Origin: Monocercomonoides exilis PA203
Lineage: Eukaryota; Protista; Preaxostyla
Direction: 5' to 3'
NCBI GenBank assembly: GCA_001643675.2
Contig: LSRY02000032.1
Location: 1,126,041-1,190,040, forward strand
DNA: 64,000 bases
Under the pieces are notes generated by a model. That model saw only the letters and a program-made list of their open reading frames with translations, did not search any database and was not told where the DNA came from. Positions 1 to 21,600 of this stretch are shown here, piece after piece. Each line of letters opens with the position of its first letter. The stretch's first letter is position 1. Made by a program: the position numbers and the translations under genes.

Positions 1-3000
1 TTCACAACAGCGTCTTCTCCGTTCATTTCAAAGTCTTTCTTCGATGTTTGCTTGATTTGTGAATATTTGCTTTCATCTTTCCCACTTTCTTCCTCTTTTG
101 CGTCACTTGAGAAGTATTCATCTGGAATTTGCTCACTTTTCAGTCCTGTTCGAAGAGCTAGTCCTCTTCCTGTTCCTTCTGAGCTTTCTAATGAAGAGGC
201 AGCAGCAATTGTTGAAGGCACGTTCCTTGTTGCCTGCAATGGAGTGACGTTCAACGGGAGAACTATTTTTCGCAAGTGGGTTATGTCAGTCCACACAAAC
301 TCGTTCTGCCCACTTTCTTCGTCAGCAGTCATCAAGAGAATTCGTTCTATTCTCTTTGATTCTTCTTCCATTGCCTCCTTTTCCTTCTCTTCAGTCCATT
401 CACCTTTATCCATCAATGCCTTCCTCTCTCTTTCTTTCTCTTCCTCTTCCTCATCGCTTAAACCTCCTTCAACTTCCCAAACAAGGCCAATGCATTCACG
501 CTCAGTGTGAGAGCTAGCTATTGATTGCGTTTTCGATAAGTTTTCAGAACAACATCCTTCACTTGGCAAGCAAACAAGGACAGTCTGTCCAACTCTGACT
601 TTCTCACGACGCACAAAATGTTTAGCTGAAGATGTATCAACAGATGGCACAAATGGGACAACACCACTTCGATCAAGTTGTCCTTTCATGTAGCTGTAAA
701 GAGAATGGATGAACGTCGCATAAGCTTGTTCATCCACACCATCCAAATCTTCAATTGTGGTAATATCATCCGAAAGAAGCGCTTTTGATCCTTCATTTTG
801 AGTCAGACTTGTGCTCAAGCTGGAAGTTGATGGAGCCACAGAAACAGAAGAAGATGCTGATAATAGTTCTGGATCCTTCCTTCCGCTTATTTGCTGTGCA
901 GCAAGAAGTCTTTTCGCTGCGATTGCAGATTCTGTTTCGAGTGAACGGCCCAGCCACATCATTCCTGTTCCACATGCAGCCGATACAGTTCCACTCAAAT
1001 CTCCCACGAATGTGTTGATTGGCTGAGTGGGTGCTGAGTCAGAAGAAGGAGGAGTCTTAAGCATAGATAGAAGCTTGACTGACGGATGAAGCATCGAAGG
1101 AGATAAAAATGTTGAATCAACAACAGCCATTTCATTGCTCTTGGCTTCTGCAGTATCTGCTTTACTCGACTCGTTACTCCAATTTTCCAACGTTATTCCT
1201 TCGGGAATATCATCTTCTTTCTCTTTCTTTTCGCTTTGAGAGATGTCTTTTCCATCTTTCATCAACTTTGAATGAGACAAGAACAGACTTTCAACACAAA
1301 ATGAATAAAGTTTCAATTTCTTTTCTGGAATCGTCGGTTCTGATGCTTTTGATGTCGTTTCAGATGGTTTTCCAGTTTCAACTTCCTTTTTCTCTTCTTT
1401 TTCAGAATCATCAGTCTTTGAGCTGTCCTTTCCAACTGAAGAGTCATCTTTTTTAATATCTTCGGCTCCTATCAGCACATCAAGAATTGCTAAGGAAATA
1501 GAATCATCTTTAACATTGTCTTCAATTTCATCTTCTCCGAACAACGAAATCAATCCACTTTCATCATTCTTTATTGGCTCATGCACTTTTGGCATGCCAT
1601 ACACTTTCTTCGGGATTTGAGAAATTAATGTTTGCTCATACGCAACCAGATCTACAGCAGATGCATGAGTCGCCTTGGAAGCATTAACAGATAAAAGCGC
1701 TGGTTTTTGTTCGGAGGTGTATATCTTAATCTGAGCTGACCGCTCTCCTCCACTTTCCTTTGTCGAATCAGAGATACCAACTACAGCTGTGTCGCTTGCA
1801 TTGCTGGCTGTGCTATTAAACGGCAAAATACTGTTTTTGTTCTGAGATTCAATTCTTTGCTCTGCTTCAACAACGCGCTTAATGAGGCTTTCTTCTTCTT
1901 CTCTAATTCTTTCATTTGTTTTGCTTTCAATTTCTCCAATATTCGTTTCTTGTTTTTTTGAATCATCTTCCTTATTATCCTTCTGCTCGCCTTTAACTTC
2001 ATCTTTTTCTTGTAAAGTTTCATTTACCTTTGATATTTTTTCCTGCTTCTCCATTGCATGAGCCAGTCTTGTTCCAAAAACAGTTTCAGAAGGAATCTTC
2101 TTTTTACTGTTAACATTTGCTGCATTTGCACCAACTGGACATTCAGCAGCTTTTACAACAGCTCGCGAAGGCATATTAGCAGAGGCGCCATTCATAATCT
2201 TCCAGAAGTGGCTGCTTGTATAAGCGTCTTCTTCTGCGCTCTCCTCTTTCTTTTCTTGCTTGACGGACAAATAAGGAATAGGCGCTCCCAGAACAGGAAG
2301 TTCCTTTGTTAAGTCTTTCGTGAGTGCCTGTGAAGAAATGCTTTCAGACACCGAATATGAAGGAGGCGGTCCAAAGAACGTGGAAGGAGATTCAATGACT
2401 TCCATTCGAGACAGCCAATCCTTCTTTTCTTCTTCTTCCTCTTCTTCTGAATCATCACTTGAGCTATCATCTTCGTCTTCTTCTTCTTCCTCCTCTTCCT
2501 CTTCCTCTTCCTCTTCCTCATCGTCGTCGTCATCATCATCAGAATCAGAATCAGAGTCAGAGTCAGAGTCAGAGTCAGAATCAGAATCATCACTTCCTCC
2601 TAGCAAGCCCTCTCCTTTCGTCCAAAATCTTCTGAACTTTTTCTTTTTTTCAGTGTCTTTCGATTCTTTCGTTCTTTTCCCTGAACTCGAATCGGATAAA
2701 TCATTCTTACTTGCATCATCATCTGAATCATCTAAACCATCTGAATCAGCAAAATCTTTTTCTTCTATTCCTAACATTGCCCCGACCGTTTGTTTGTTGA
2801 TAGGAATCTCTCCCCGAAGCATCATAAGTATCACGTCATCATCAGTTAAACCCTTATCAGAGGAAGCTGAAGCCTTTGCAGATGCAGATTTCGTTGAGGC
2901 AGTTTCAGAAACATCACCATAATCGTTTTTATCGCTTTCATTCGTGTGCTCTTTGGACGTTTCCTCCTTTCGTAGAAACTGTCCAACATCAACTGGATGC

Positions 3001-6000
3001 TCAATGAAGCTGTGTGTCTGAAGAAGAAGCGAAAGAGCCATAAACAAATCGTCGCTTTCAATGTCTTCACTTTTTGTCACTTTGCAATCCTTATCACTTT
3101 TTTCTCCCTTCAAAGCATCTAAAACTGAAGTTGCTCCAGAAATAGGAGATACTCCTGTCTTTTTCAATGCAAATGTTGAAGCTAACAGACTCAGTGCTTG
3201 CTTTTCTGCTTCTGCTTCAATCTCCTTCTTTGCTAAAGCCAGTGCTTGTTCTTGCGTTATTGGATTCTTTGTGAATGAAGACGTAGCCAGTAACATCATC
3301 ATTCCATCGAAATATTCATTCTTTTTGCTGATTTCATTCGCACATTCAGATATACCCATGTCAGTTTCAGGTTTTGTATCTGCCACTTTTTCTTTTTCTT
3401 TTTCTTTTTCTTTCCCTTCGATCGTTTTGCTTTCGCTCCCAGATACTTCTGAAATAAGGAGTTTCAGAAGTTCTTCTTCGCTTTTGTCGGCACTTGTTTC
3501 TGAGGAAGCCACATCAACCGAAGAAGTTGCAATCTCTTCTTTTTCTTTGTTCTGTGCCTCAGTCTCTTCTGCTTGGTGAAGCCTTCCCATGTAACTGATG
3601 AATTTCCTTTTCTTTGCCCATTTCATTGCTAGTTTGGTGCCAATGAAGAACGGCGGAAACACTTCCTCTTCTGGACAGACCCAGATGTGATCACCAGGAT
3701 TTGGAATCTCATATAACTCCTTTTCATCATCGTCATCTTTACTGCTGTCTCCATCACCTCCAGCCACGCCTTCTTCATCCATAACAACATCATACATTCC
3801 TTCGACACCTTTGTATTTCTTGAACATCGCAGGCGATTCTTTCAATGAGATTGAAGGAGGCAAAATTGGATCGCACAAGCAAGGCCAGTTGCGATCGGTT
3901 GTTTCGTTGCAGTCGCAGAATCCGCGCGAGTGTAAAAACGTCATCCAGGGCTCGTGTTCAGGCTTCTTCTTCTTTTCCTTCTTCTTTTTCTGCTCGTCAG
4001 TTTTGTATGACTGGAATTTGTCACGGCGGTGATGCTGATGGTCGTGGCAGGTAGCCAGGCACACTGCACACAACCCTTCGGATTTTTTGAACTCGCAATA
4101 AACACATTCAAAGAATGCCATAATTCCACCTTTGTCGATAAGATCTGACCCAAATTTCCCAACGCCGATGGATTCCTCCAGGATTTTTGCTGGTTTGACA
4201 ACAACAGCCGCCTTCTTTCCATCGTCTTTGTGGCTGCTACTGTCACTTTCTGAAGCACCATGCACTCCGACTGTTGCTCCCCTCAAAAGACCTCTTGACA
4301 GAGCATCAAACATCGCTTCTGCAAGTCCATTGCCAGAGTCTTCCAAGCATTTCTTGAATCGTTTTTTCAGATCAGGTGAAATTGGCAACGCTTCCGCACC
4401 TTTTGGCTCAATCTTGTTCTTCTTGCTCTTTTTATGACCTTTCTTTCCTTTCTTCCTTTTTTCCTCCTCTTCCATCTCGCTCGGATCAACAAACAGATAC
4501 GCAGGATGTATTCTATTCAGCTTGGCAAGTTGCTTCACTTTCCTTTTAGGCGTCTTGCTATCAACGTGGACTGACCCGATATGCGGTCTGGCATGTCTCA
4601 GGCATATTCCTTCCTGCATGCACAGAATTGAACTCCACAATGAATCAGCCGAGGGGGTTTCAAACACATTGAGATGGATCTTAAATCTGTTGTCCAGTGC
4701 ACACGAAACAGCTGCCTTTTTCATGGTAATAGTTGTCGGATATATCGGAGAGAACACTTTCAACTTTAAAGATGAAGAGCCAAATGCAGACGGAGGTGGT
4801 GGAGAAATAGAATCTGAATCAGAATCTGAGAAATCTCCAGCCAGTTGAAATTCCACGTTTTCTCCTTCTTCGTCTTCTAAAGAGCTGTCATCGTCAATGT
4901 CAAAGAATATCGATGTTGCTCCGCCTTCAGCATCAGCAAATGGATCTGCCCCTGATGATGAAAACGATCCAATCGATGCTGGCGATGGAGCAGTAGATGA
5001 AAGAAGCGAAGACGCACTCGAAGAGCTTACCATGTTCCGCATTAAGTCACTTCGAGCCTTTTTGCCGCAAAACAGGAATATCGATCCGAAGTCGTTCAGT
5101 TTTAAAAGTGTGTGTCGTTCCATGTTTTCGCTTATAAGAGCTTCAGCGTCTTCTTCGTTGAGGGACTTCACTCCTTCAGACGGATGAGGCATCCCTTTGA
5201 TGAAAGTGGATGGGCTGTACTGATATTCCCATCGCTTGACATAAGCATGAGGTTCAATAGAAGAAGATTCAGCAGAAGAAGTCGATGATGATAATTGAGA
5301 TGAGGAAGATTCATCCGAATTCGCAGAATGGAGATAAGATGGATATTCAGTCAGACAGCCTTTGCCTAAGAACTTCTTTTTGCTTTCTGTGATTCCCGTT
5401 GGAGCGCCTACACCGCCACCCCATTTTTGTCCAGACAGCCTCAGACTTCTGTCTATCACTTTTGGGAAGTAGCAGATGATGCTGTCTGAGTCTGCATCAG
5501 GCACCACAAGACGAGCCCCCTTTGCAGTTGTGTCCAGCAGAGACAGCGCATGCAGCAGGCAGCGATTGTCACAAGGGGAAGTGATCAATATTCTATCGAA
5601 TTTGAAAAGTTGAGGAGACATTGATAGAAGCGAATCGACCATTGGGAAGAAGTTGATTGGAATGTCGGAGTCAATCTGGCTGTAGTAAGGAAGACTCAAC
5701 GTGAATGGCGATGTGTGCGCAGTCAAAGGCCTGCTGTTCTTCAGCTGATCAGCCAAACAGCAGGATTTTGTGCCAGATTTAGAAGATGATACAGAAGATG
5801 AAAGTTTTGTTGAATGACCTTTTCCGCAACCACATTTGATGTGCACTCCATCTTCACCATCACAACAGTACACGTCGTTCGGATTGACAATGCCAACCTT
5901 TCTTTCCCACTCAGCATATTCCTGCATCCTCTTTTCTGCTTCTTTGCAGTCCCATTCGTCATCTTCTTCCTTCTTCACCGACGGATTTTTCATTTTGACG

Positions 6001-9000
6001 TTCTCTTTCAGTTCCGAAATGAGATCGAAGTTCAACACAGACATGCTCTGCACAACAAACCCGCCTGGTGCAACAAGATTCGATGCAGCCATTCCGATGA
6101 AGTAAGGGTCACATGATATAACAAGCGTCCTCAGCCCAGGCGTCAGGTCAAGCGAATGGAGAAGGAACTCCACAAGCGCAGGTGGGAAGAAGTAAACATT
6201 GTGCTTCAGCTCTTCGACGGATACTGGAGATGACTTGTCTTTCTCCCAAAGTTTGAAGTTCTTTTCTAATGTGATCATCGGACATGATGTTGTAACAGCA
6301 GATATCACTCTCTGCGACACAGGCTCAAGAGCAGGAAACGGCAAGTTCTTTGCTTTCTCCACAAGCGAAGAAGAAGAAGAAGAAGAAGAAGACGACGACG
6401 ATAAGGCAGACTGCGATGTCTGTTCCTTTTGCTTGCGTGCTTCTTCTGAGTTCTTCTCCTGGATCATCGCATTCGCATGGTCCACCATCGAATTCGCCTT
6501 CCGCTTGCTTTCGAGCCAGAATGCTCCGTCGCTAAGCTTTTTGATCTTCTTTGAGCGAGGAAAATCAGCAAAAAGATCAAAAATGTCTTCATGCGAAATG
6601 AAGCATGGAAGGACACTCCATTCGCATTCGGATGGAAGAGGCAATGGTTGACTAACAAGAGGCGTTGAAACATCAGTTGAGGAAGATGAAGATGAAGATG
6701 AAGATGATGCTTCTTCTTTCTCTTCCTTCTTCTCTTCTTCTTTCTTTTCCTCTTCTTTCTTCTCTTCTTCCTTCTTTTCCTCTTCTTCCTTCTCTTCTTC
6801 CTTCTTTTCCTCCTCTTCTTTTTCAGTGCTTTCTTTATTATCATCAGTTTTGACAGGAATTCCTTTCTTTTCTGCCTCTTTGATTGATTCCTGGATTGCC
6901 CGTTCCAACTCCTGCTCAAACAAAAGATCTTCAGCTGAGGCAGGTTCTTTCTTTTTTTCATCCTTCTTTGCTTTTTTAAGTTCCTTCTTCTTTTTCTTCT
7001 CTTCTTCCTTCTTCTTCTTCTTTTCTTCTTTCTCTTTTTTCTTCTTCTGTTTTTCTGTCAGCTCAGCTTCTGCTGCAGCAGGCTTCTCTTTCTTCTCATC
7101 ACTCCACAAGCATCTTGGATCAACTGGAAGCGAAGGGTGTTTGAAGAACGAGATAGGCGCTTCTCCAACTTCGTCCTCTTCTTCTTCGTCTGCATCGTCT
7201 TCACCTTCTTTCTTCGCCTTCGTTTGATGTATGCCGCTCTTTGACTTCACCAAAACACGACGGCGCAGGTCAAATGAAAGAGGAGTCGTCAGAGACGGAG
7301 GAAGAGGCGGATGGAACTCTGTGAGTGCTTCAGTAGAGGAAGAAGAAGAAGAGGAGGAAGAAACAGAAGTTGAATGAGCATTGACCACAGGCAAAGGAGT
7401 GAGCAGGGAAACTGGCGGGAATGCTGAGCCAACGGTTGAGATGGGGAATCTTGCAACTGACGTTTCTTTGCAGTACAAAAGACATGTCGCAACATCCACA
7501 TGCTTTTTCTTTCCCATCCTGGCAATCGAGGCAAGCTCATTTCGGTTGAGGATCGCAAAGAAATATGTTCTGCTTTCTTTCTTCAGTTCCCTGTCTCGTT
7601 GCTTTGCTTCCTTCAGATCCTTCTTCCTCTTCTTCCTGGCCATCGCTTTCTCTTTCCTCTTGACTGAATCATCATCATCATCATCGTCATCGCTATCGTC
7701 TTCTCCATCTTCTCCATCATCATCACCTCCGCGGCATCCACAATCACAGCAATCAGCCAGCTTGCTTTTCACTCCGCATTCTGAGCAGCGGAATTCTGAG
7801 TTGTTCTTTTCTTTGATGAGCTGCGAGGGAAGCGACAGCACCTGTCCACACTCGCATTTGACGACAGACAGGATGAAGCAGCGCCTGCAGATGGAAAGGC
7901 AGGCAGTGGCACAGACATCGAAGAAGGAGTGCTCCCAGCTGGACAAAGTGGCATCCATCACAACAGGTGAGAAGGTTGTCAACGGAGCTGCCCCTGTGGT
8001 AGAGGCAGATGGAGAAAAGGACGGAGAAATCGAAGGCGAAGAGAAAGGTGATGGAGAAGGTGTTGATGGAACACTCAAAAGATTGGTGGTGTCTTTATTG
8101 GGAGACTCATAAAGAGATGTGCTAAGTCCCTTTTCGCCATCTTCAATGTGCTTCATAAGCATGTCTTTTCCAGTCTCAGAAAGCGAAAATGGAACAGAAG
8201 ATGCTGGAGCGATAATTCCATCATCCTTCTTCTTTTCTCCCATTTTCGACTTCACATCATCTGGAGCAATTGTCAGCTGCATTGTGATTGGCGTTTCGGC
8301 AAGCTCCTCCAAAAGAGCACCACATCGCATAGAAGTTGCAGCAGAGTTCTCAGCTTTTGCTTCTTTGGCAAACGATGAAGCAACAGAGAACAAAGAACGG
8401 CCTGCCAAAGGAGCAGTTGGTAGTGACTGAACAGACGATGACAACAAATATGAGACGAGCTCATGTGGAAGATCATTCAACACATTCATTTCGAGAAGTG
8501 ATCTGATAAATGAGGAAGATGAAATAGAAGCGGAAGATGCAACAAGAAGAGCTGTAAGAAATAGAGAGGAATCTGAAATTGTATTTACGTTTTTAGCTTC
8601 ATTGCTTTCTTCAGAAGATGAAAGAAGTTCATTTTTCTCTTTCATCTTTTGCGAATTTAGTTCATTCAAAACTTTCAGCATTGCATCTTTAATTTGAAGC
8701 ATCTCCACACAAACTTTCAAGTTCTCAGTGAATTTTCTGCAAATCTCTTCTTTTTTCTGGCTACAAGCTGTCTTTGAACAATCACATTCTTCTTTCATCC
8801 TTTCAATTTTCAAGCTGATAAATGGAACAGCCTTTGCCTTTCTTTTCATATCTTTGTCGCTGCAATCTGCATCGCAATCAAACAAAACAGAAGCAGTTGG
8901 CATTCCTTCAGAAGCTTGAATCACTGTGCCTGAGTGTCCAGTTGTGACATCCACAACTCTATCTCCGGTGCGAATAGACAACGACACATCAGACTGAAAG

Positions 9001-12000
9001 CCAACAGAATGGAACAAAACTAAAAGAATGTTTAATGCCTCATTTTTGTGCAAATATTGATTTATCTGCGAAAGACGAGGAACCTGAGACTCAGTTTTCA
9101 TAGCAGAATCTGATCCATTTGACGACTTGAGCCAAGGGAACATTGCATTAATTGCATTTGGCAACGAATTCACCATTGAATTAATTCTGTTGGATGTCCA
9201 GTCATTCCACTTGCTTCCAGCAACGTTTTCAGCAATCACTTTGACAACAGTATTTTCAGCAGCACGGCTGACTTTCTGCATCGAAGTGTATGTCTGCAGA
9301 CGAAACGGAACTAAGAAGAAGCGGATGAGAGCGTCCCAAAAGATGGAAAGACGCCTTTCTGTTTCAGGATCAACATCTGGCTTCTTCTTCTTCTTTTGCT
9401 TAGACTCTCCTTCGTCTGACTGAACTGAGTCTGCTTCACTTGCTTGAGTGCGCAGTTCAGACTTCACGGACAGCGCTGGAGATTTCGAGCTTGAACTGGC
9501 AGGCGCAGGGGAAACAGACCTTCTCTGGCTATGAGCGATAGCAGGCTTGCTGACTTCAACTGCTCCTTCGCTTTGACTTTTGCCTTCTTTCTTCAATTCG
9601 CTTTCTCGTTTCTGCAGCGCCTTCAACCACTGGACTCCAACTTTAGCAGTTGTGGAGTCGATGCCTGATGAAGTAAGAAGTGTGCTTAGCAAACCATTCT
9701 CTAATGAAAGAAGAGAAGCAACATGATCAGAATTCAAAGCAAGGAATGGTATGACTGTCTTGAAAAAGCTGATCGATGCATCAAGAAGCGAAGCTTTGGC
9801 AGATGAAGATGAAGATGAAGAAGATGCTCCTGTGGATGGCTGACTGGAAGAGAGAAATCGGACAGCCGAAGAAAGCGCTTCTTTCCTTTGTTGCGATGAA
9901 AACAAATAAGAATGAATTGTCTGTGCTGCTGTTGAAGGGCTTGGCTGATAGCGTGTAAGAAGCCATGTTCTTAGTCTGGCAAGATCCTCATCTGATTCTC
10001 CCGCAGATGTTGAAGAAGCACTGGAGGATTGCTGGTCAATCATTGACAGAGGAATAAGTGTGCTCATCCGGAAAGATGTTGGCAAGCTTGCAATAACCAG
10101 CAGCAAATCAAATAGATCGTATTCTTTTCCTTTTAATGAAACAGATACCCCACTTTTAGTGCCTGAAGGCGAAGATGGCTCATAAAAAGACAGTAAAAGT
10201 GGAATGCATGAGAGAGAGACAAGTTGAACGCGAGGCGATCCAAAAAGAGCACACAATGCCATTTCCTGAATTGCAGAGTATTTCTTGTTTGAAGAAGCAG
10301 ATGATGCAGATGATGCTGACAATGGCTGTTTTGCTTGATCTTTCAAAATGGATCGGAGTGTTTCGTGCGAAGAATATGTGCTAAGGATAGTTTTCAATGA
10401 GGTGAGAAGAGTAAAGATTGTTGTATCATCAATTGAATGGAATGATTTGTTTGTGTCATCTCCACAATCCTTCACATCACTTGAATTTTCAACGAAAAGA
10501 TGAGGCTGATAGAAATTGTTGAGCTTCAATGAATTGTCCTCTTCTTTTTCGTCACCTTCTGCCAATTTCTCGTTGACACCATCGTTTTCTTCCAACTGAT
10601 CTATCCATTGAATAAGTTCTTTTGTGTTGCTCGCTCCGATTCTGCCTGACTGGATTTCTCGAACAATACGACTCATTCCAGCAGATGAAACAAGAGCATC
10701 GCTTATTACCTCATCTGCACACACAGACAGACAGTTCAAAAGACAGTTAATTGCCTCCTTCGATAATGCCATCATCGATTCTGAACATTTTTTGGCTGAC
10801 TGTCGCTTTGAAGAGCATGTTAATTCACAAATCTCAACTGTCATTGCCTTCAGCACAGCAGCAGCGATTCGCTTCACCTGAATAATGTCAATTTCAACAG
10901 ACGACTGAACAGAAAGAATTGTCTTTACTGATTTGCACAAAGAAGGAATAATCAATGCCAGCTCCTTTTCAACAGCAGTCATTGTGCTGCTTCCATGAAG
11001 CAAGTTAGCGAAATGGCTGTTGAGTGTTGAAACACATTTAGTGAAGAAGATTGAGAAAAGAGACAGAAGATGAGAAACACGTGCAGCTTGTAGCAGAGCA
11101 ACTGGAGAATGAATAGAAGAAGAGGCCGATCCATCCTCTGTGGTTGAAATAGCCCTCGTGAATGATTCGATTTCGTTGTCAAGAACAGTCTGAAGTGTCG
11201 AAAACAGACGAATCATTTCAGCAAATTTCGACATTTCAGCTGCAGAAGGCGAACCAGCAGAAAACAACTTTGATTTTACAGTTTCCTCTGTGACTGACAG
11301 AATCAGCGAGCGAACTGACCTGCACAGCTCAAACAGCGAAAGAGACACGAAATGAGAGGACTTGGCAGAATAAGACGAAAGTGCACGCAATCCAAACAGC
11401 TGCAGCTGATTGCTCAGGCGCTTCATCAAAAGTGATCGGATAAAGCCAGGTGAATGGAAAGATGCAACAAAAGAGGTTGAAGATGCAGCTGATGAAGAAG
11501 CTGATTGACTCGAAAGATCAAAAGACATCCCAACTTTCTCAAATGCTGCTGAAGCATAAGACAAGATCTGATTGTCTGTGAAAGACAAGAAAAGCGAATG
11601 AGACAAAGAAGGAGAAAGAACCATTTCGTTCATGAGCTTCATTCTTTTCTTTTGATCTGCAATCACTTTATCCATTCCAGTCTTCAATGGAGCATCAGTT
11701 GCATCAATGCCACGAACATCTCCCATCAATTGCGCTTCAATAGAAGACAACACTTTGTCCATTATTTCACAAGAGATTCCTTCACAAGCAATTCTTTTGC
11801 ACAACAAGGCTGTCGTTGCATCATCAAGAACACTCCGATAAGAAGCTGATGGTCGTTTGCTGTTTGACTGAGAAGAAGAAGAAGACGAAGAAGAAGACGA
11901 AGAAGAAGACGAAGAAGAAGACGAAGAAGAAGACGAAGAAGAAGACGGAGTTTGATAAGATGACGGTATTTCATTGGAGCTCGTTTGAGCATCAGAATAT

Positions 12001-15000
12001 GGTGAAATGTGATCTGGAAGAGGAAGAGACGGATGCCGAAGAGGATTCATTATTTCCTTCAGCATTTGTCCAGAAAGACAAGACATCGAATGAGAAAGCA
12101 CGACACACCAAAGACCTTCTCCCACATCTTCATCTTGAACACGAGCAGAAGATGCAGATGAAGACGAAGATGACGATGCTGCTGATGAATCGTTCTTAAT
12201 CAACCTTTCGTATTCAAATGGTGAATTGCCAGGAGAGGAGTGTACGACTTTAGTTGGGTGGTTGATCTTCTTTTTGTCTTCTTCAACAAACATGCCACGT
12301 CCCATTTCGCTTGCTCTTCCGTCGACTCTTCCGCCAAACGCGCTGTGTGACGTGGGCATGATGGATGTCACGTCGCATTCAATTCCCCAGTCAACACCGC
12401 TTTTGTCAGAGAAGAATGAAAACACCAGTGCTGGCTGCATCACAACAATCTCGTCTTTCGGGAAGCTGTTGCCTGTGAAGAGATAAAGTCTCTTGCCTTC
12501 CTTTTTGTTTGTGGAAGGCAGACGAAGCGCAGTGAACTTCGAAGAAGAAGAAGAAGAACCACTTTTCTTGGCAGATGAAGGCGATCCTGCTGTGCCTGCA
12601 CTCGGAGCAGAAACAGAATGCTCAATCGCTTTTGCCATTTGCCATTTTGTTGGAAGTGAAATTGTGAAGAAGTCGTATCTTTGTTCTGTTTTGCACTGTT
12701 TGTTGAATCTGATACGATATCCCAGCGCAGACGGCACATAGAACACCTCCTTCCAATCCTCGTTGTTGAGATATGGATGGCTTGTTTCGATTCTGACTGT
12801 GGCAGATTGCAAAGAAACAGTTTCTGTATGATGCAGCAAACGATACTGTTCGGTGAAGAACAGAGGATATGGAACATTTGATGCACGTCTAACAACTTCT
12901 TGCTTTGATGATGAGCACGATTCTGAAGCAGAACTCTGAAGTGCCTTTAATTTATCAGCTGGAAATATCAATCCAAGCATATTGTCGAAGTATCGCTGGA
13001 AAATCAGAACGGGTTTCAGAAACACAGCTGCAGCATCTGTGGAAGAAGAAGAGAGAATTGCCATCATCACACGAAGCGGATGAACCAGCTTCCCAGCAAA
13101 TGAATGAAAGACCACAGACAGCAGTGAACGGCGAAATGAAACATTCACAACAGACGACGACGAAGAAGAAGAAGAGGAAGAAGAAAGCTGCTGGAGCTTT
13201 TTGGTTATCTTGTCGAACACAACACAGCTTCCTCCCAACACATACAGTGCATAGTGTGCAAAGAATGGGAAGAGCACATTAAATGCAGGGTTGATTGCTT
13301 CAGCTGGAACAATTTTGTTCTCAAAGCTTTGTGACCTCTGATTCTGAGAAGATAGAGTTTTCTTTGGCCTTGGAACAAGTCTGAAGAACAGAGAAAACAG
13401 CTGCTTTTGGAAAGAGCACAAGAATTCCAAAAGAGACGAATGGGACTTTTGACGCTCATCCAGTGAATTCTGACTGTCAATCAAAGAATTGAGATTAGAA
13501 ACTGTGCTGTTCACTTCGCTCAGAATCATCATCTGCCAAACGCGAACTGCATTCAAATAAAACGAAAGAGACGAGTCTGTATTTCCACTCTGGAGAGGTT
13601 CAAATTTTCCAAACAATGCTTCTTTCTCAATTTTGCTCACTGACATTTTTGCGCTTTGCTTTGTGAGCGATAGAGGTTGATAAAGTGAAGGGAAAAGTTG
13701 AGGACTTAAAGAAGCAACAGGAAGGAGATTTCTGGTCGAAAATGCAGATAGTGTCACAAACTTCATGTGATATGGAACAATTGCAAATATCCTTGTGATG
13801 ATTGATGAAACATCACAAGGAATATCAAACTGAAGCGAAGAAGATGCTAATAATGAAGTCGAAGATGCCTCTGGCGCTTCATTTCCAGAAAGGCACAGTG
13901 AATGGAAAGAAAGCTGAGCAGCATCTTTGTTTGATTTTCTTTGAGCGATTGCCTGTGTTAATATGTTTGCCAGAAGTTCCAGTGCTTGTGTTGAAGATTC
14001 TGCGAATGTGATCACAACCAAAAGAAGAAGCCCCACAGAATAAGCAGAAACAGCATCCAAAGCAGATGCAAACGGCAATTCTTTGCTTGCCTTTGCAGAA
14101 CAGAATTTATTCACTGCTTCAAACAAAGCAGATATATGCGAATCCAAAATCCCAACAGACTTTCTCGTGAATGGCGAATGAAACAGTGAAAGCACGTTGG
14201 CCCTTGAAATGCACATGACAGAATAAATGCAGCTGCAAAGATGTGCAATTTTCCTTTCAATTTCTTTGAGTTTTGTCTGAGACTTTGCTTCAGAAGCAAG
14301 TGATGTATACTCCTTTACTGCGTCGTTCAGAAGATTGTTGAGGAGATTTAGAGTTTCGGCTGCTTCCTCTACAAACTGCGACGATGCATCCAGAACATAT
14401 GGCGCAAACAATGTCATACATTCAAAAGAAGTCAAGGGCGATTCAGCTCCTGCAAATTGAGAGAAATTCTGTAAGTGGCTAAGCATTTGATGAGCAATCA
14501 CAAGTGAGTCAGTCTCCTTCTGCTTTTCATCCACCAGCGCCTTCGAAGAGGAATGCTGCATTTGACAATGATATTCTTGCTTCCTATCTTCTAATTGCAC
14601 CCATGCAGAAATTATTTCTTTGTGTTCTTCTTCTTCTCTCTTCAGAATCCCCATTCTCTGCTTCATTTTTAATCTGTGCAGCATCAGAAGCAAATCCACT
14701 GAGTCTTCGCTGCTTTGCTGTTGCTTGAGTTCTTCTTCTCCACAGCATGTAAGACTATTCAAATATTCATTGATTGTCATTTCAGCAGCTGTTGGAATGC
14801 TCTTAACTGAGTTATCAGTCAGTGGAAGAATCATCAATTTCTGTTCCTGTGCTTCTTTCTCCTTTTCTGTCTCTTTCAGCTGATCTTTTCCGTGATTATC
14901 CTTTTTCGAAGAAGATGAGTCTCTTTTGAAAAACAATGCCTCTGACGACCGAGTGATGAGCACCTGGTTCACTCTATCGAAACAGACAGGACCAGACTGA

Positions 15001-18000
15001 AGAGTGAAATTTATAGACAGTTCGATGTGCGGCTCCATCTCAATTTCTATTGCTTCTACTTCCCTTTTCTGAGCTGATTCGTTGAATGAAGACGAGGCAG
15101 AAAGAGAAAACATCATGTCCTCTTCGCTGTTTGCACCACAAGCACTGTCTCTGCACAAACTGCACTGCTTCTTGTTGGAATCGAGTTTTGTGTTCTGATC
15201 TATCTCCTTTATCGCATCATCTATGTTCGCTCTCAGATTGTATTGCACGAGTGGCTCATTCAACTGTGCAGATGTGAGGCAGAAGGCATATCCATCTGAA
15301 AAGATGCTTCCTTCGAGCAGATGCTTTTTGGTAAGAAGACGAATCTTGTTGATCATCGGATGAGACGGCGCCAGAGGCATCCTCGTCAGCTTGTGCGAGG
15401 CGCGGTGCAGATGGTTTTCTCTGCCGGTTTCGTAGCATTCGGGGCAGACGAACACTGCTCTGGTATTGATGTTGTCGTATGTGAAGTATGATAAAGTAGA
15501 TGATAAATGCTCCAAATTGGCAGATGGCTTTCTCATCTCCTTTTGCAGCTCTTCATCGCTGTGGATAGACTCTTCACCTCTACTCCCAATCCTCACAAAA
15601 TCTTCCCATTCGCGGCGTGTGCATTCTGTGCAACAGAACTGTACGTCTGGCGAGAGAGCTCTTCCGCACACGTTGCACGATTCGAGTGAGACATGATTCG
15701 ATGTCGAGAGAAGATGGCGGCTCTGCACACGCCATTCAGACAGCTGTGGCAGTGTGTGAGTGTTCTGTGCAAGTGGCAGAGTCTGACTGAAGACGGTGCA
15801 TCTCCTATAAACAGTCACCAGGATAAATGGCAGTGCCTCGTTGGCGCTGTGTACAAGCGATGCCAAATGAAGCAGATGTTCACCATCAGTGCCGAAGCGT
15901 GCCACCTCCGAATAGCCCATCTTCCGCAGCTCACGTGGCGTCAAACCCGTTTTCTTCTTCTTTGCAGCATTCTCGTTTTGCGTAATTTCAGATTTTGATT
16001 GAGCTTTCTCTTTTTCTGAATCGTCAAGCGAGTTTGAATTCTCTTCTATCTCTTCCTCCTCTTCCTCTTCCTCTTCTTCACTTATTTCGCTGGAATCGTC
16101 CATCCAGCTGTCTTCTTCATTTGAGTTGCTTCCTTCTCTATCAATCTCATTTTCAACAACTCCTTCTGAAGTCAACGTATTTTGTGACAAATGATCATCG
16201 TCTTCTTCTCCATCATCTTCATCTTCTGCTTCTTCTTTTGCTTTTCTCTTTTCTTCTTCTTCACTCTCTTTTTTCTTTGTCTTGTCTGTTTCATGTTTTT
16301 CTTTTCTATCCTTCAGCTCGACTTCTTCTTCATCTATCTCTGAATCAGAATCTGAAGCAAGATCATCATCTCCTTTCTTTTTCCCTTCAACATTGTCTTC
16401 CTCTTCCTCATCCTCGTCTCCTTCCTCCTCTCCATCACCATCGCTTTTATCCTTTTTCCCTTCTCTTCCACTTTCTCCAGTTGAAGCAGCATTATCAGCA
16501 CCAGACGATGCCTCACCGCTTCCTGTGTCATCTTCCTTGCTTTCCTTTGCAGCTCTTTCTCTTCCTTTGAGCGTCGAAAGCTGCGCGTGCTGAAGGAGTG
16601 TTTCGCGGAGAACAGGCGAATACGATGTCAGCTGTGCAACCTCGTGGAGCATCGAAGGAAGCGTGACAAACGAAAGTGATGGCTCCTCAAATGGACTCTG
16701 AGATCCTTTTGAATTGCAGGAAGATGGAAAATTCTCTTTTGAAGAAGAATTACGCTCTTTTCGTTCTTTTCTTTCTTTCAATACCATCTTCAACCCTTCT
16801 GCAGTGTAGCATTTTTCGACACATCTAAGCGATTCTGTGTCAAATCCAGAAAAGACGCACTGGCTGTTCGAACTGTTGTTGAAGGAGGAAGAAGAAGATG
16901 ATGATGCAAATGAACTATTTTGCAAATTGTCGCTTTTAAGGAGCATGTGTGAAAAGAAGGAACCAGAAGAATGGTGAAAAACAATCAATTCTTTATTTGG
17001 AAAAACTAACGTATGAATGTCGCAATCCCCCCATTCCTGACCATCTTTTTCTCCATTGTTGGGCATTGCTCTTTCTTTCCCTTTTAATTCATTCAAGTCC
17101 AATGATCCACTAACGTCAATTACATTTCTTTCTGTTCTTTCAGAGGAAGAGGTGTCATTGTTCTCTCTTCGAGCTTCATCAACTCTGCCAGCAACTGTTC
17201 CCTGAAATCCGGAGCCAATCTTTACTATCAATCCATTTATGTGCATAAACACATGCGCACCATCGCTTGCAATTCCCTTTAATTTTTTGCGCTGAATTTT
17301 TTCATCGAGAAAAATACGCTTTTCATTCGCTTTTGTTGGAGGCGAAATAAGCGATACTTCCATTGGAGTTGGCGATGAAACAAGAGAAGTGAATGGATAA
17401 AATAGAGACCTCCTCCAGCTGTTAAAATCGATAATATGCTTATGCTGATGTGCCAAAAACTGATGTAATGTAGATGTAGTACGCAAAAAAGCTTTTTCGT
17501 CTTCGATAACCAATTTATAATGTCTCAAAATTTCTTGTACAGCCATTAAAAAATAGTGTTGTTTCCCAGTTGTCACTCCTAAAGTGATGAGAAAAGGAAT
17601 TAATATTGTTTCAAAATGTTTATTTCCTGAGCATGTCTTCATTTCTTTAATCACCTTATCAAATCCACGATAACCTTCGTTTGATAATTTTGCTAATGTT
17701 GATGGAGTAAAACTTTGCAGAATATTAAGTAATGCACAGAACATTTCATCTGAAGTTTCTGGAAAAGCACTTTTTAACGTTTGAGCAATTGTGCTGCTTA
17801 AATTAAGTGCGAGCTGAATTGATGTTTCTCCACTTTTCTTTTGACTTTTTGATGACTTTTTATCAATTTTTTGCTTCAATTGAACCTGGCATTAACAAAT
17901 GCAAAAAATAAAGTTAGCGTTCTGACAAAACAAAATATTAAAAAATTTGAAAATTCAAACATCATTTTCAATTTCTCGTCTTGAAATAACTGTCATTCGC

Positions 18001-18155
18001 CTGCTTTCATCAACATGACTTTGATCAACTTTCCGAAGTTCATTAAATCTTGGTATTTCAACCATGTCATTAACATTTTTAGAGGAACTTAAATCACAAT
18101 TGCCGGCATTCAACCGCGCTTTTCTCGTAAAATTAGAGTTGAGAAAAAATGACAT
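1..18155 (-). CDS. Giant HECTD4/MYCBP2/HERC-like putative E3 ubiquitin ligase, 3'-truncated by the window edge (>6,000 aa in window); exons 18155-17961 and 17885-<3
   Basis: One minus-strand frame was open wherever spot-checked from 17885 to the window edge. The ORF track lists no long minus ORF here, consistent with no stop in the window. The 75-nt phase-0 intron is GTTTGA(17960)..CAG(17886). Motifs read by eye: IASDGAHVFMHINGLIVKIGSGFQGTVAGRV (17275-17180, HECTD4/MYCBP2-type N-terminal motif), ZZ finger (15677-15393), ETSHPY..CKTE..D..F..FFSDKSGVDWG CUB-like domain (12791-12366), IRTGDRV..GTVI..ASVLFD (~9000-8875), zinc ribbon (~7860-7770), UIM (~6925-6876), PIMT-like fold (~6330-5470), UBR box (~4113-3873). 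No catalytic HECT/RING domain is visible in the window. Confidence 0.85.
11870..11947. repeat. 12-nt tandem repeat (GAAGAAGAAGAC)n, about 6 copies, encoding poly-Ser on the minus strand
   Basis: Directly visible tandem array inside the giant gene. Confidence 0.85.
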
Positions 18156-18612: not shown

Positions 18613-21600
18613 ATGGATTCTTTATCCAACAAGGATAAAGATTTAGCAATGATATCGCAAGTATTCTTGAGTACAAATTCTTCAAATAAAAATAATGAAT
18701 CCAGCCGCGATAAATATACTTTTTCTCAAAATGCTAGCGATTTGCACCTTGAAAATTCGCTTATTTCAACAACTGACACTCAACAATTGTGCAAAGAGCA
18801 ATTGCAGGTTGAAGCAAATTGTGATGCAACTACAGAAAAATCTTTATATCAAGATAAATCAAAGTATTTCAAACATCGCAATAGCTTTATTTCAGACAAT
18901 GAAAAATCTGAAAATGAAAAAAACGATAAAAAATTCGATCATTTGAGTCCCGAAGGACTTATTTTACAAAACGATAGAAAAAGTGAAAACAGCATTAAAC
19001 GTCAACAAAAATTAAAGATAAAAGTGAAAAAGGTTGAGGAAGCAGAAAAATTTTCGGGTCAGATTGATGATGCTCAATTGAATGTTGATCAACGTCAACC
19101 TTCACGGAGCAATATTTGTTCTGTATCATCTGCAAGTTCTTCGCAATTTCCTCATTCAGTTACAAGGTCAAGTCACAAAGAATCAATTAATGCTTCTCGC
19201 ATCCAAGGAACCGGATATCTTATTCAATCTGCAAGTTCTCGTTCGTTGGTAATGTCGGAATTTTCATCTTCAAACACCGCAAAATCAACCATTTTTCATA
19301 ATTCACCGGCATTAAAAGAAAGGCAATTTGCACTGAGAGAGATTCTGAACATGGAACAAGTATTTATTGAGCAAATGAATCATCTGATTATTGTATGCAA
19401 ATGCTCCTTCGAGGAATTTTGTGAAATTTATTCGAAACTTTTCACTGCTATTGAGGACACTTTTTTCTTTTGACGAATTATTTTATTTTCTTATTTTTCT
19501 GAGACTTATGGCTTTTTTTTAAATTTTATTGTTATCCTTTGATTAAAAAATGTTATGTATTTTTCGCCTTTTCTTTCTGTTTGTTTTGTTTCAGTATTAC
19601 AAGATGCCTCTTGTTCGCTCGATGGATCACTTTTCCTTGACACCTCGTGATTTGCGTGTTCTTTTCCGCAACGTGTCTGTTCTGAGAGACATCACAACGC
19701 ATCTGCTCCGTTCACTTCAGAACTGCGTCGAATTCAACCAGAAAAACGAGATGGAAAAGAAGAAGGAAGAAGAGAGGCTTCTGAAGGCAGCACGCGAATA
19801 TGTCGAGTGCGCTGCTCGCAAATCTTTGTCAGCTTCAAACATGCAAATGCAACAAGTCTCAACAGATTCATCATCATCATCATCATCATCTTCTTCTTCT
19901 TCTTCTTCTTCTTCTTCTTCCTCTGCTGTTCCTGTTCCTCCTCCTCCACTACTCCTTCCTGTGCCTCGTCTGCCAGCCAGCAACGAGCAGCTGAACAGCG
20001 TTGGCAAAGTGTTCTCTGCCATTTCGCATCTGCTCACTCAGTACTCTCCTTATGTTTCATCCCAGCCACAGGCAAACGAGTTTCTCAACCGGCACATCAA
20101 AACAAACAAGCATTTTCGCGAGTTTCTGAGCCAGACGCAGGCGATGCTGCCGATGTACAAGTTTGATCTGAGCACATATCTCGCATATCCTGTTCAACAC
20201 GTGGTTCGATACCAGCTGCATCTGGAGAAGCTGATACAGACATACGAAGCAAGAGAAAAGGAGCTGCTGGCAGAAAAGGAAAGGGCAAGAGAAGAAGAAA
20301 AAAAGGATGAAGAAGAAGATAAGGGAGAGATTGAAGAATCAACATTTGAAGCAGAGCATTCACAATATCAAGCATCAAAAGATGGAGCAGATGAATCTGA
20401 GTCTGAAAGAGAAAACATTCCGAACAGACCAACCGAAGAAGAGAAAATGAATGCGAAGATCGAGAGGGAAGTGAGAAAGCAGGAGAGGCTGATAAAAGTG
20501 TACCAGCGCAACATGTGTGCAGAGGATGAGAAGAGAGAGGAAGAAGAGCTTCGTGATGCTTTGAGTCGGATTCGGCAAGTGACAGCGTCGATTGACCATT
20601 CGAAGCAGGAGCAGGATGAGAAAGTGCGTGTGGTGGAGATTACGAGGGAGATGCAGCGGGGAGAGGAGATTGCTGGCAGTTTGATTGCGCCAAGCAGACG
20701 GTGTCTGGATGAATGTGTGGCAGAGGTGATGATTGAGAGGCTGGAGACATTCTGCAAAGTGAGCACGAAAAAGAGGGGTAGAGCGAAGGAGAAGGAGGCA
20801 CACGAACAGAATTCTCATGAGGAAGATGGAGAGAAGAAGCATTTTGCAGGAAATGACATTACAATCACAGAATCATCAGCTTTTGCGAAAGTGAGTCAGC
20901 AAGCAACTCAAAAGAATGCAGGATTACAGCCACAAACACAGAAAAGCTTTTCTTCAGATTCCTCGTTTGGAGAAAGCGAACTACAAAACAATAATAAGAG
21001 ACAAGGGGTGAATGGAGTGTCTGATTATCCATCTGATTTTGAATACAACATCACTTCCTCGAGAAAGCATTCAAGAAGTAGAAATGGAGAGAAAGACAAC
21101 ATGACAACAAATGTGAACAATCGATCTGGTGAAAGAAGAGCAGTTTCTCCGTCCAGCCAGCCATCGTCGCGTGTGTCGGGCTCGCCAACACCAACAACAG
21201 CCTCTTTCTCAACAAATCATTCAGACAGCAGACAAATTGTGTACAGATCAGAACTGGCAGCAAATGTGGTTGTGTTCAACGATGCGCTGATGCTGAACAG
21301 ATACAGCAAGAAAAAGAGAGAGAATGTGATTCGACTGAAACGAGAGCTCAAAACGAAGAAGGCGAAGGACCAACACATTGCGTCTTCTTCTGCTTCAGAT
21401 GCGTCTTCGTTTGTGTGGCAGACGTTTGAATGTATCTTTCCATTGCAGTTTGTGAAGACTGTTGTGCTCATCGACGACAACCAGACAGACTTCGTTCTTG
21501 TCAACGAAGAGATGAATGGGCAGAGACAGAGACAGAGCAATAACACATCCAGCAGACCGAACTCTGCTTCCATTTCTCCCCAGCCTCGCAGCACAGATGT

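What the first reader, a model, noticed from the sequence alone, without database searches (positions are those of the whole stretch)
1..18155. Hidden >6,000-aa E3-like gene combining two N-degron-type zinc fingers, a UIM and a pseudo-PIMT domain
Seen: one exon of about 17.9 kb missed by the ORF track. N to C it carries a HECTD4/MYCBP2-type 'SDG..KIGSG..GT..G.V' motif, ZZ finger, ExxHPY CUB-like domain, HERC-like SH3-type barrel, zinc ribbon, UIM, PIMT-like fold and UBR box. Known: UBR boxes (UBR1/2/4) and some ZZ domains (p62, HERC2, KCMF1) bind N-terminal degrons, and UIMs bind ubiquitin. Inference: a single-chain protein quality-control ligase that reads several damage or degron signals. 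I do not recognise this domain combination or order from characterised E3s; plant BIG/UBR4 has UBR before ZZ and no PIMT fold.
Basis: partly seen in the sequence, partly recalled or inferred. Interest (0 to 1): 0.85.

Follow-up and report, generated by a model that had tools for sequence, protein, structure and literature searches.

The report
Giant degenerate HECT protein of Monocercomonoides
The left 18 kb of the window encodes most of an expressed 7,850-residue HERC2-related HECT protein of the oxymonad Monocercomonoides exilis that really does carry a UBR box, a ZZ-like finger, CUB domains and a dead PIMT-like domain, but whose ligase domain has serine where the catalytic cysteine should be.

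Summary
One stop-free minus-strand frame of 7,787 codons runs from window 17891 to 5.5 kb left of the window. RNA contigs show a 75-nt GT-AG intron spliced out and a first exon starting at the ATG at 18155, giving a 7,850-residue product. A HECT domain lies at the C-terminus, outside the window.

The genome is Monocercomonoides exilis. The gene belongs to a collinear family found so far only in Preaxostyla: four M. exilis paralogues, three Blattamonas proteins, one Paratrimastix protein and one environmental protein.

Family profiles confirm two CUB domains, a UBR4/FBXO11-type UBR box and a PIMT-like Rossmann domain that has lost its AdoMet motifs. A split ZZ-like finger is probable. An 8-Cys zinc ribbon is conserved. 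The UIM is weak and is not conserved in relatives.

The C-terminal module is nearest to HERC2, not HECTD4.

This copy has Ser (TCA) at the catalytic Cys position, a shrunken E2-binding subdomain and a HECT branch nine times the median length. It is therefore more likely a pseudo-ligase scaffold than an active quality-control E3.

The scan also noted a PIMT-plus-UBR arrangement elsewhere in this genome (s1-471565).

Verdict: a new variant of a known kind (class I giant HECT).

The parts
17961..18155 (-). Exon 1, 65 codons, starting at the ATG at 18155
   Evidence: Sequence read. RNA contigs reach 18167 and join 17961 to 17885.
17886..17960 (-). 75-nt GT-AG intron
   Evidence: A joint skipping 75 bases appears in the contigs of all four RNA runs, with 210 bases on the shorter side. 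GT and AG were read.
1..17885 (-). Window part of exon 2. The exon continues 5,469 bases left of the window to the stop codon.
   Evidence: Stop-free frame. RNA contigs cover 13500-17882 without other real joints.
17157..17294 (-). Conserved Gly-rich N-terminal motif (frame residues 200-245), probably part of a beta-rich region
   Evidence: Conserved in P0001, P0005, C47, P0004, P0006 and C8. No known family was matched.
15192..15974 (-). Beta-rich block that carries a split ZZ-like zinc finger. The ligands are Cys 739, 742, 754, 757, 816 and 819 and His 829 and 833 (window 15393-15677), with an insert of about 55 residues between the two halves.
   Evidence: Six Cys are invariant in 8 relatives. 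hhalign of the short-insert members against eight M. exilis ZZ domains aligns all eight ligands in register, P 6.8e-4. Pfam ZZ_ADA2 scores 0.009-0.054. The AF2 finger has low pLDDT, while the flanking strands reach pLDDT 84-88 and resemble propeller blades at Z 6.5 or less.
12312..12824 (-). CUB domain 1 (frame residues 1690-1860), with a Ser-rich insert
   Evidence: The family profile A4 matches C1r, TSG-6, PCPE-1 and MASP CUB domains with E from 5.5e-5, and all 13 hits are CUB domains.
8856..8984 (-). Short conserved SH3/KOW-like strand motif (frame residues 2970-3012)
   Evidence: Conserved in C47, P0001, P0009 and P0004. The fold was not tested, and Pfam MIB_HERC2 did not find it.
7734..7889 (-). 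Conserved 8-Cys zinc ribbon-like module (frame residues 3335-3386)
   Evidence: The Cys pairs are conserved in 6 relatives. No Pfam family was matched.
6861..6917 (-). UIM-like motif in a Glu/Lys-rich linker (frame residues 3659-3677)
   Evidence: Pfam UIM_2 is the only hit, at E 0.029 and 14.9 bits, below its cut-off of 21. The motif is absent at this place in relatives. A comparable motif arises in 7% of locally shuffled copies.
5442..6359 (-). PIMT-like class I methyltransferase fold (frame residues 3845-4150) with a disordered insert of about 110 residues. The motif I glycines and the post-motif-I acidic residue are lost.
   Evidence: Profile A7 against solved structures: TrmI 1.4e-4 and PIMT 2.3e-3, and all 15 hits are methyltransferases of this group. 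Foldseek top hit is PIMT 2yxe at 1.6e-4. VIA Z is 14.6 and the top 8 hits are all PIMT; PCMTD1 scores Z 12.4. All Atlas feature hits are PCMT. Motif loss.
4491..4769 (-). Conserved block of unknown fold between the PIMT-like domain and the UBR box (frame residues 4375-4467)
   Evidence: Conserved in P0001, P0005, C47, C8 and P0004.
3567..4112 (-). UBR box of the UBR4/FBXO11 type (Cys/His 4596-4673, split by a Lys-rich insert), followed by a conserved extension to residue 4775
   Evidence: Profile A9 matches the UBR4 UBR box at 2.1e-4 and FBXO11 at 0.012, and 6 of 7 hits are UBR boxes. Pfam zf-UBR is the only hit on a short piece, at 0.003. The aligned Paratrimastix orthologue passes Pfam zf-UBR at 1.7e-7.

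Best explanation
Window 1-18155 (minus strand) is the 5' three quarters of a two-exon, expressed gene of Monocercomonoides exilis that encodes a protein of 7,850 residues. It belongs to a family of giant class I (HERC2-related) HECT proteins found so far only in Preaxostyla.

The same modules, separated by long low-complexity linkers, occur in the same order in all members:
1. A beta-rich N-terminal region with an inserted ZZ-like finger.
2. CUB 1.
3. A small SH3-like motif.
4. An 8-Cys ribbon.
5. A PIMT-derived Rossmann domain that has lost its AdoMet-binding motifs.
6. A UBR4/FBXO11-type UBR box.
7. A HERC2-type CUB 2.
8. A C-terminal HECT domain.

Shown: the gene model, expression, family membership, and the identities of the CUB, UBR, PIMT-like-fold and HECT modules.

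Inferred: the modules are protein-recognition surfaces. The UBR box and ZZ-like finger would bind protein termini or short degrons. The PIMT-like domain would act as a ligand-binding pseudo-enzyme, as in PCMTD1.

In this paralogue the HECT domain has Ser at the catalytic Cys position, a reduced E2-binding subdomain and a very long branch. The protein is therefore most likely not a thioester-forming ligase. It more likely acts as a substrate-binding scaffold or pseudo-ligase, perhaps alongside the paralogue on contig C8, which keeps an intact HECT domain.
For: - Gene and expression.
- Organism: MONOS_985 is 100% identical on contig C14 of the same assembly.
- Collinear relatives.
- HECT: Pfam E 7.5e-6, above the gathering score. 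A class I HECT profile built here matches the N-lobe at 2.3e-12.
- Ser at the Cys position. The codon is TCA, two changes away from any Cys codon.
- The HECT branch is 5.18 against a median of 0.57.
- CUB. CUB 2 matches animal HERC2 near residue 3600-3710 at about 1e-13.
- UBR.
- PIMT-like fold. Loss of the AdoMet motifs.
- ZZ-like finger.
- Nearest HECT relatives are protist MIB_HERC2+CUB+SPRY proteins, then animal HERC2.
- Precedent for a PIMT-like domain as an E3 substrate receptor: PCMTD1 (PMC12590147).
- Precedent for ZZ and zf-UBR gain in class I HECTs: PMC3673628.
Against: - No binding or catalytic function was tested.
- The ZZ-like finger has no confident model and no Pfam match above threshold.
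- PCMTD1 needs AdoMet to bind isoaspartyl peptides (PMC12590147). This domain lacks the AdoMet motifs, so the analogy may fail.
- The C-lobe still keeps the Leu-Pro-x-Tyr segment after the Ser, which could mean some retained function.
- The 'Preaxostyla only' statement rests on one exhaustive single-sequence search of residues 3801-5000 and on word-limited searches.
Confidence: 0.75

Rival explanations
1. It is an active single-chain quality-control E3. The Ser takes ubiquitin as an oxyester (or another Cys substitutes), and the UBR, ZZ-like, UIM and PIMT-like modules each read a degron or damage mark.
For: - The HECT fold is present, and the C-lobe segment after the Ser is kept.
- The ORF is intact over 7,787 codons and is expressed.
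- The recognition modules are conserved.
Against: - The catalytic Cys is Ser, encoded by a codon two changes from Cys.
- The E2-binding subdomain is shortened.
- The HECT branch is nine times the median.
- The sister paralogue MONOS_985 has lost the C-lobe altogether in the DNA examined, which suggests that catalysis is dispensable in this subfamily.
- The UIM is not conserved.
- The AdoMet motifs are lost.
Confidence: 0.15
2. It is the oxymonad orthologue of HECTD4 (KIAA0614), as the N-terminal motif suggested to the reader.
For: HECTD4 and HERC2 both belong to class I of the HECT classification (PMC3673628). Both are giant proteins with few recognised domains.
Against: - In the search seeded with the CUB2-to-HECT region of the Blattamonas relative, no listed hit is named HECTD4. 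Many are named HERC2, with E down to 1e-42, although HECTD4's length lay within the window searched.
- CUB 2 matches HERC2 directly.
- No HECTD4 sequence was available to test the N-terminal motif.
- The HECT tree does not resolve this copy.
Confidence: 0.07
3. The recognisable modules are structural relics in a huge scaffold. The fingers only hold zinc, the PIMT-like domain is a spacer, and the protein has a role unrelated to degron or damage reading.
For: - The AdoMet motifs are lost.
- The first Cys region upstream of the UBR box, present in Paratrimastix, is missing in the oxymonad copies.
- The acidic residues used by N-degron-binding ZZ fingers (from my knowledge of p62 and HERC2; PMC9001736 for HERC2) are not evident in the family consensus.
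- FBXO11-type UBR boxes are not known N-degron readers (my own knowledge).
Against: The zinc ligands, the PIMT-like core and the extension after the UBR box are conserved between Paratrimastix and the oxymonads despite 25-40% overall identity. This argues for selection on these surfaces.
Confidence: 0.3

Closest known systems
HERC2 (class I 'large HERC' HECT E3)
   Same: - Giant size.
- A CUB-like domain before the HECT domain, which matches HERC2 directly at about 1e-13.
- The HECT domains of the intact relatives are nearest to protist HERC2-like proteins and then to HERC2.
- A ZZ-type finger is present, and the HERC2 ZZ binds arginylated termini (PMC9001736).
   Different: - Pfam found no RCC1-like repeats, Cyt-b5, MIB_HERC2, CPH or DOC domains.
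- The ZZ-like finger lies near the N-terminus and is split.
- There is an extra UBR box, a PIMT-like domain and an 8-Cys ribbon.
- The catalytic Cys is replaced by Ser.
UBR5/EDD and UBR4
   Same: UBR5 combines a UBR box with a HECT domain. The UBR box here is closest in sequence to the UBR4 box.
   Different: - UBR5 belongs to HECT class IV (PMC3673628) and has UBA and MLLE domains.
- UBR4 has no HECT domain.
- Neither has a PIMT-like domain.
PCMTD1 (CRL5 substrate receptor with a PIMT-like domain)
   Same: A PIMT-derived, non-methylating domain attached to ubiquitin-ligase machinery. The structural match is Z 12.4.
   Different: [quoted passage not shown]
- Here those motifs are lost, and the domain sits inside a HECT protein rather than a SOCS-box adaptor.
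Paratrimastix pyriformis 'putative HERC2' (P0009), Blattamonas P0003/P0004/P0006 and M. exilis MONOS_985 (P0005)
   Same: They have the same order of ZZ-like, CUB, PIMT-like, UBR, CUB and HECT blocks. These are the true family.
   Different: P0009, P0004, P0006 and the M. exilis C8 copy keep a canonical HECT domain with Cys. This copy has Ser, and MONOS_985 lacks the C-lobe.

Membership tests
HECT E3 ligases (Pfam PF00632) | HECT domain at the C-terminus | tested here: met
   Pfam gives E 7.5e-6 and 26.2 bits against a cut-off of 23.9. A class I HECT profile built here matches the N-lobe at 2.3e-12.
HECT E3 ligases (Pfam PF00632) | Catalytic Cys in the C-lobe, about 35 residues from the C-terminus | tested here: not met
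   Ser (TCA) aligns with the Cys of the Thr-Cys motif in C8 and P0004.
HECT E3 ligases (Pfam PF00632) | Complete N-lobe with the E2-binding subdomain | tested here: inconclusive
   The region is about 25 residues shorter and poorly aligned. There is no structure.
HERC2 | RCC1-like domains plus Cyt-b5, MIB_HERC2, CPH, ZZ and DOC | tested here: not met
   Pfam found none of them. Only the CUB-like-plus-HECT module and a ZZ-like finger are shared.
HECTD4 (KIAA0614) | Orthology of the HECT domain and the N-terminal region | tested here: inconclusive
   No listed hit is named HECTD4. No HECTD4 sequence was in hand, and the tree does not resolve this copy.
UBR box (PF02207) | Cys/His zinc-ligand pattern and profile similarity | tested here: met
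   Family profile against the UBR4 box, 2.1e-4. The aligned Paratrimastix orthologue passes Pfam at 1.7e-7. This copy alone is below threshold at 0.003.
UBR box (PF02207) | N-degron binding pocket | not testable with these tools
   Pocket residues cannot be judged without a confident model. The second acidic residue after the Cys-Asp-Cys motif varies in the family.
ZZ zinc finger (PF00569) | Six Cys and two His in cross-brace order | tested here: inconclusive
   The ligands are conserved. hhalign aligns them in full register at P 6.8e-4 but with probability only 27%. Pfam is below threshold. The AF2 finger has low pLDDT.
Protein-L-isoaspartate O-methyltransferase (PF01135) | PIMT-type Rossmann fold | tested here: met
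   VIA Z 14.6, rmsd 3.2, 165 residues aligned, and the top 8 hits are all PIMT.
Protein-L-isoaspartate O-methyltransferase (PF01135) | AdoMet-binding motif I (Gly-x-Gly-x-Gly) and the post-motif-I acidic residue | tested here: not met
   Both glycines and the acidic residue are replaced in this copy and in all oxymonad relatives.
CUB domain (PF00431) | Profile similarity to CUB domains | tested here: met
   Family profile against C1r, TSG-6, PCPE-1 and MASP CUB domains, E from 5.5e-5. Protist relatives carry Pfam CUB.
UIM (PF02809/PF23625) | Motif above threshold and conserved in relatives | tested here: not met
   Pfam gives E 0.029, below the cut-off. The motif is absent in relatives. A comparable motif arises in 7% of shuffles.

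The most novel reading that the evidence does not exclude
A lineage-wide tandem of a PIMT-derived pseudo-enzyme and a UBR box inside a HECT giant is an independent recruitment of the isoaspartate-recognition fold to the ubiquitin system, convergent with PCMTD1. It would read damaged or truncated proteins without AdoMet. This paralogue, with Ser in the HECT active site, would be either a decoy or regulator of the active paralogue, or a natural oxyester-forming HECT.
Probability: 0.12. Interest if true: 0.8.

Novelty: new variant of a known kind. Interest (0 to 1): 0.55.

Why it matters
Only one E3 system, CRL5-PCMTD1, is so far known to use a PIMT-like domain to recognise spontaneous protein damage. 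Its authors ask whether other ligases do the same (PMC12590147).

This report describes a PIMT-like domain conserved next to a UBR box in HECT giants of an early-branching, mitochondrion-lacking lineage. The arrangement offers a second, independent case to test.

The family also holds natural variants with an intact, a Ser-substituted and a truncated HECT domain within one genome. That is a ready-made series for asking what giant HECT scaffolds do without catalysis.

Tried and rejected
- Pfam on 1,400-residue pieces of this protein and of MONOS_985 found nothing relevant.
- Single-sequence searches of solved structures with the HECT region, the PIMT-like region and the UBR region gave nothing significant. 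Family profiles were needed.
- One search failed on a frame error and was corrected.
- The Atlas features of the N-terminal region gave no usable hit.
- The search for homologous proteins on residues 1130-1980 scored no candidate, not even the known paralogue, probably because low-complexity words swamped the candidate choice. That blank is uninformative.
- The search seeded with the Paratrimastix PIMT+UBR region found only itself.
I therefore cannot tell whether the gene is annotated.
- hhalign of the family against the single M. exilis PCMT exon was weak (E 0.18) and was used only for residue mapping.
- Two Pfam zf-UBR hits in the genome (C13, C50) look like B-box fingers and were not used as references.
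- The AF2 model of the ZZ block was too uncertain in the finger for a fold test.
- The HECT tree could not place this copy because of its long branch.
It was replaced by an index-based one.
- The spliced exon 1 + exon 2 protein, and the protein joined across the window edge, were never sent to a search tool. The pieces were searched apart, by reference.
- Rejected readings: pseudogene or chance ORF (7,787 open codons, spliced RNA), and sequencing error at the Ser codon (two base changes would be needed).
Full report
**Observation**

The ORF list shows nothing long on the left of the window because the tool omits frames that run off an end. A six-frame scan finds a minus-strand stop-free stretch from 17891 to 3, 5,963 codons long. 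The window is contig C28:1126041-1190040 of an 82.3-Mb assembly in 101 contigs. With the 20 kb to the left fetched, the frame continues to a stop 5,469 bases beyond the window, for 7,787 codons in all.

Contigs of four RNA runs from one study cover 13500-17882. They then skip 75 bases with GT-AG ends on the minus strand and continue to 18167. The gene model is therefore:
- exon 1 at 18155-17961 (65 codons);
- intron at 17960-17886;
- exon 2 from 17885 to 5,469 bases left of the window;
- a product of 7,850 residues.

The splice shows that the contigs derive from RNA. The runs are labelled synthetic metagenome and are contigs only, so they say nothing about expression level or about the rest of the exon. 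Residue numbers below are frame residues (residue 1 = window 17891); add 63 for the spliced protein. The joined spliced protein and the protein joined across the window edge were not sent to any search tool. Pieces were searched by reference.

**Organism and family**

An exhaustive phmmer search of residues 3801-5000 against 1.84 billion representatives found only four proteins. One is from Monocercomonoides exilis (MONOS_985), two are from Blattamonas nauphoetae and one is environmental. MONOS_985 is 100% identical to contig C14 of this same assembly, so the genome is M. exilis and MONOS_985 is a paralogue.

Two further paralogous frames lie on C8 (7,152 codons) and C47 (4,209 codons). A search seeded with the C-terminal region of the Blattamonas relative added another Blattamonas protein (P0006) and a Paratrimastix pyriformis protein deposited as 'putative HERC2' (P0009). 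All of these are collinear with the gene here, block by block.

**HECT domain**

Pfam finds HECT in the C-terminal piece outside the window, at E 7.5e-6 and above the gathering score. A profile built from 55 class I HECT tails matches the N-lobe at 2.3e-12 and weakly matches the last C-lobe segment.

- Aligned with the C8 copy and P0004, which have the canonical Thr-Cys motif, this copy has Thr-Ser.
- The codon is TCA, two changes from either Cys codon.
- The E2-binding subdomain is shortened.
- In a tree, this HECT has a branch of 5.18 against a median of 0.57 and cannot be placed.
- MONOS_985 lacks the C-lobe in its frame and in the 1.5 kb downstream.

I checked it and agree.

**Modules in the window**

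- *CUB.* A profile of both copies from the family matches C1r, TSG-6, PCPE-1 and MASP CUB domains from E 5.5e-5, and all 13 hits are CUB domains. The second copy, left of the window, matches animal HERC2 near residue 3600-3710 at about 1e-13.
- *UBR.* The Cys/His pattern is conserved. Pfam zf-UBR is the only hit on a short piece, at 0.003. The nine-member profile matches the UBR4 box at 2.1e-4 and FBXO11 at 0.012, and six of seven hits are UBR boxes. The aligned Paratrimastix segment passes Pfam at 1.7e-7.
- *PIMT-like.* Language-model features point only to PCMT clusters, at score 0.80, which is a lead only. The nine-member profile matches TrmI at 1.4e-4 and PIMT at 2.3e-3. An AF2 model has core pLDDT 80-93 and a disordered insert. 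Its best Foldseek match is PIMT 2yxe at 1.6e-4. With VIA, the eight best chains are all PIMT (Z 13.6-14.6, rmsd 3.0-3.9, 150-165 residues aligned), followed by CbiT and TrmI, with PCMTD1 at Z 12.4. The motif I glycines and the post-motif-I acidic residue are replaced here and in all oxymonad relatives. The domain is a PIMT-type fold that should not bind AdoMet in the usual way.
- *ZZ-like.* Six Cys are invariant in eight relatives and the two His are common, with a variable insert between the fourth and fifth Cys. hhalign of the short-insert members against eight genuine M. exilis ZZ domains aligns all eight ligands in register, with P 6.8e-4 but probability 27%. Pfam ZZ_ADA2 and the KCMF1 and dystrobrevin ZZ fingers appear only below threshold. 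AF2 does not model the finger with confidence. It is probable, not proven.
- *Zinc ribbon.* Eight Cys in four pairs are conserved.
- *SH3-like motif.* It is conserved, but the fold is untested and Pfam MIB_HERC2 does not find it.
- *UIM.* One good-looking motif sits in a Glu/Lys linker. Pfam UIM_2 scores 0.029, relatives lack it, and a comparable motif arises in 7% of locally shuffled copies.
- *N-terminal Gly-rich motif.* It is conserved in the family, but I could not link it to HECTD4 or MYCBP2.

**Classification**

The intact HECT relatives are nearest to protist proteins with MIB_HERC2, CUB, SPRY and Laminin_G_3 domains, then to animal HERC2 (E to 1e-42), HERC1 and HUWE1. No listed hit is named HECTD4, although its length was within range.

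In the published survey, HERC1, HERC2 and HECTD4 (KIAA0614) all fall in class I. Independent gains of ZZ and zf-UBR in class I are noted there for Thecamonas, and PCMT is not mentioned (PMC3673628). A word-limited search with the Paratrimastix PIMT+UBR region found nothing else.

**Mechanism**

Shown: a conserved array of protein-recognition-type modules on a giant HECT scaffold, and a degenerate catalytic domain in this copy.

Inferred: the modules bind protein termini, short motifs or damaged residues. This copy acts without thioester catalysis, as a scaffold, decoy or partner of the intact C8 paralogue.

The PCMTD1 precedent (PMC12590147) makes a ligand-binding role for a non-methylating PIMT fold plausible. 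But PCMTD1 needs AdoMet for isoaspartyl binding, and this domain lacks the AdoMet motifs. That weakens the direct analogy.

**Novelty**

The gene is a new variant of a known kind. It is a class I giant HECT family restricted, as far as these searches reach, to Preaxostyla. Its members combine ZZ-like, UBR and PIMT-like modules not described together in characterised E3s, and this member carries a natural Cys-to-Ser active site. Relatives are already deposited as hypothetical or 'HERC2' proteins. The scan also noted the PIMT-plus-UBR arrangement on another piece of this genome (s1-471565).

Noticed in passing
L005 (G000:C14:2461612-2468643), minus strand: The paralogue MONOS_985 (7,469-codon frame) ends just after the HECT N-lobe. 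No C-lobe was found in any frame of the 1.5 kb downstream. It is a HECT protein without a catalytic lobe, unless there is a distant exon.
   Followed up: partly
G000:C8:367864-389319 (+) and G000:C47:881540-894166 (-): Two more giant paralogous frames. The C8 frame (7,152 codons) ends in a canonical HECT domain with the catalytic Cys. The C47 frame (4,209 codons) ends in an Asp/Ser-rich tail after the UBR block, so either it lacks a HECT domain or an intron follows.
   Followed up: partly
G000:C20:1218282-1218398 and G000:C19:1203581-1203679: Canonical ZZ domains lie inside other open frames of 10,821 and 10,499 codons. This genome holds several proteins of about 10,000 residues.
   Followed up: no
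G000:C13:311078-311194 and G000:C50:331457-331585: Two near-identical frames of about 360 codons score above the Pfam zf-UBR cut-off, but their Cys/His pattern looks like a B-box finger. They are probably false zf-UBR calls.
   Followed up: partly
window 18613-19473 (+): A 286-codon ORF lies in the 1.4-kb gap between this gene and the divergent 2,965-codon gene at 19550-28447. Low-depth RNA contigs lie on 18752-19392.
   Followed up: no
window 16043-16085, 16191-16257, 16396-16433, 16885-16914: RNA contigs break or carry loose ends at purine-rich (GAA-like) coding repeats. The apparent joints 14636-16885 and 16419-16885 each occur in one run only, with about 20 bases on the shorter side. They look like repeat artefacts, not introns.
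   Followed up: partly
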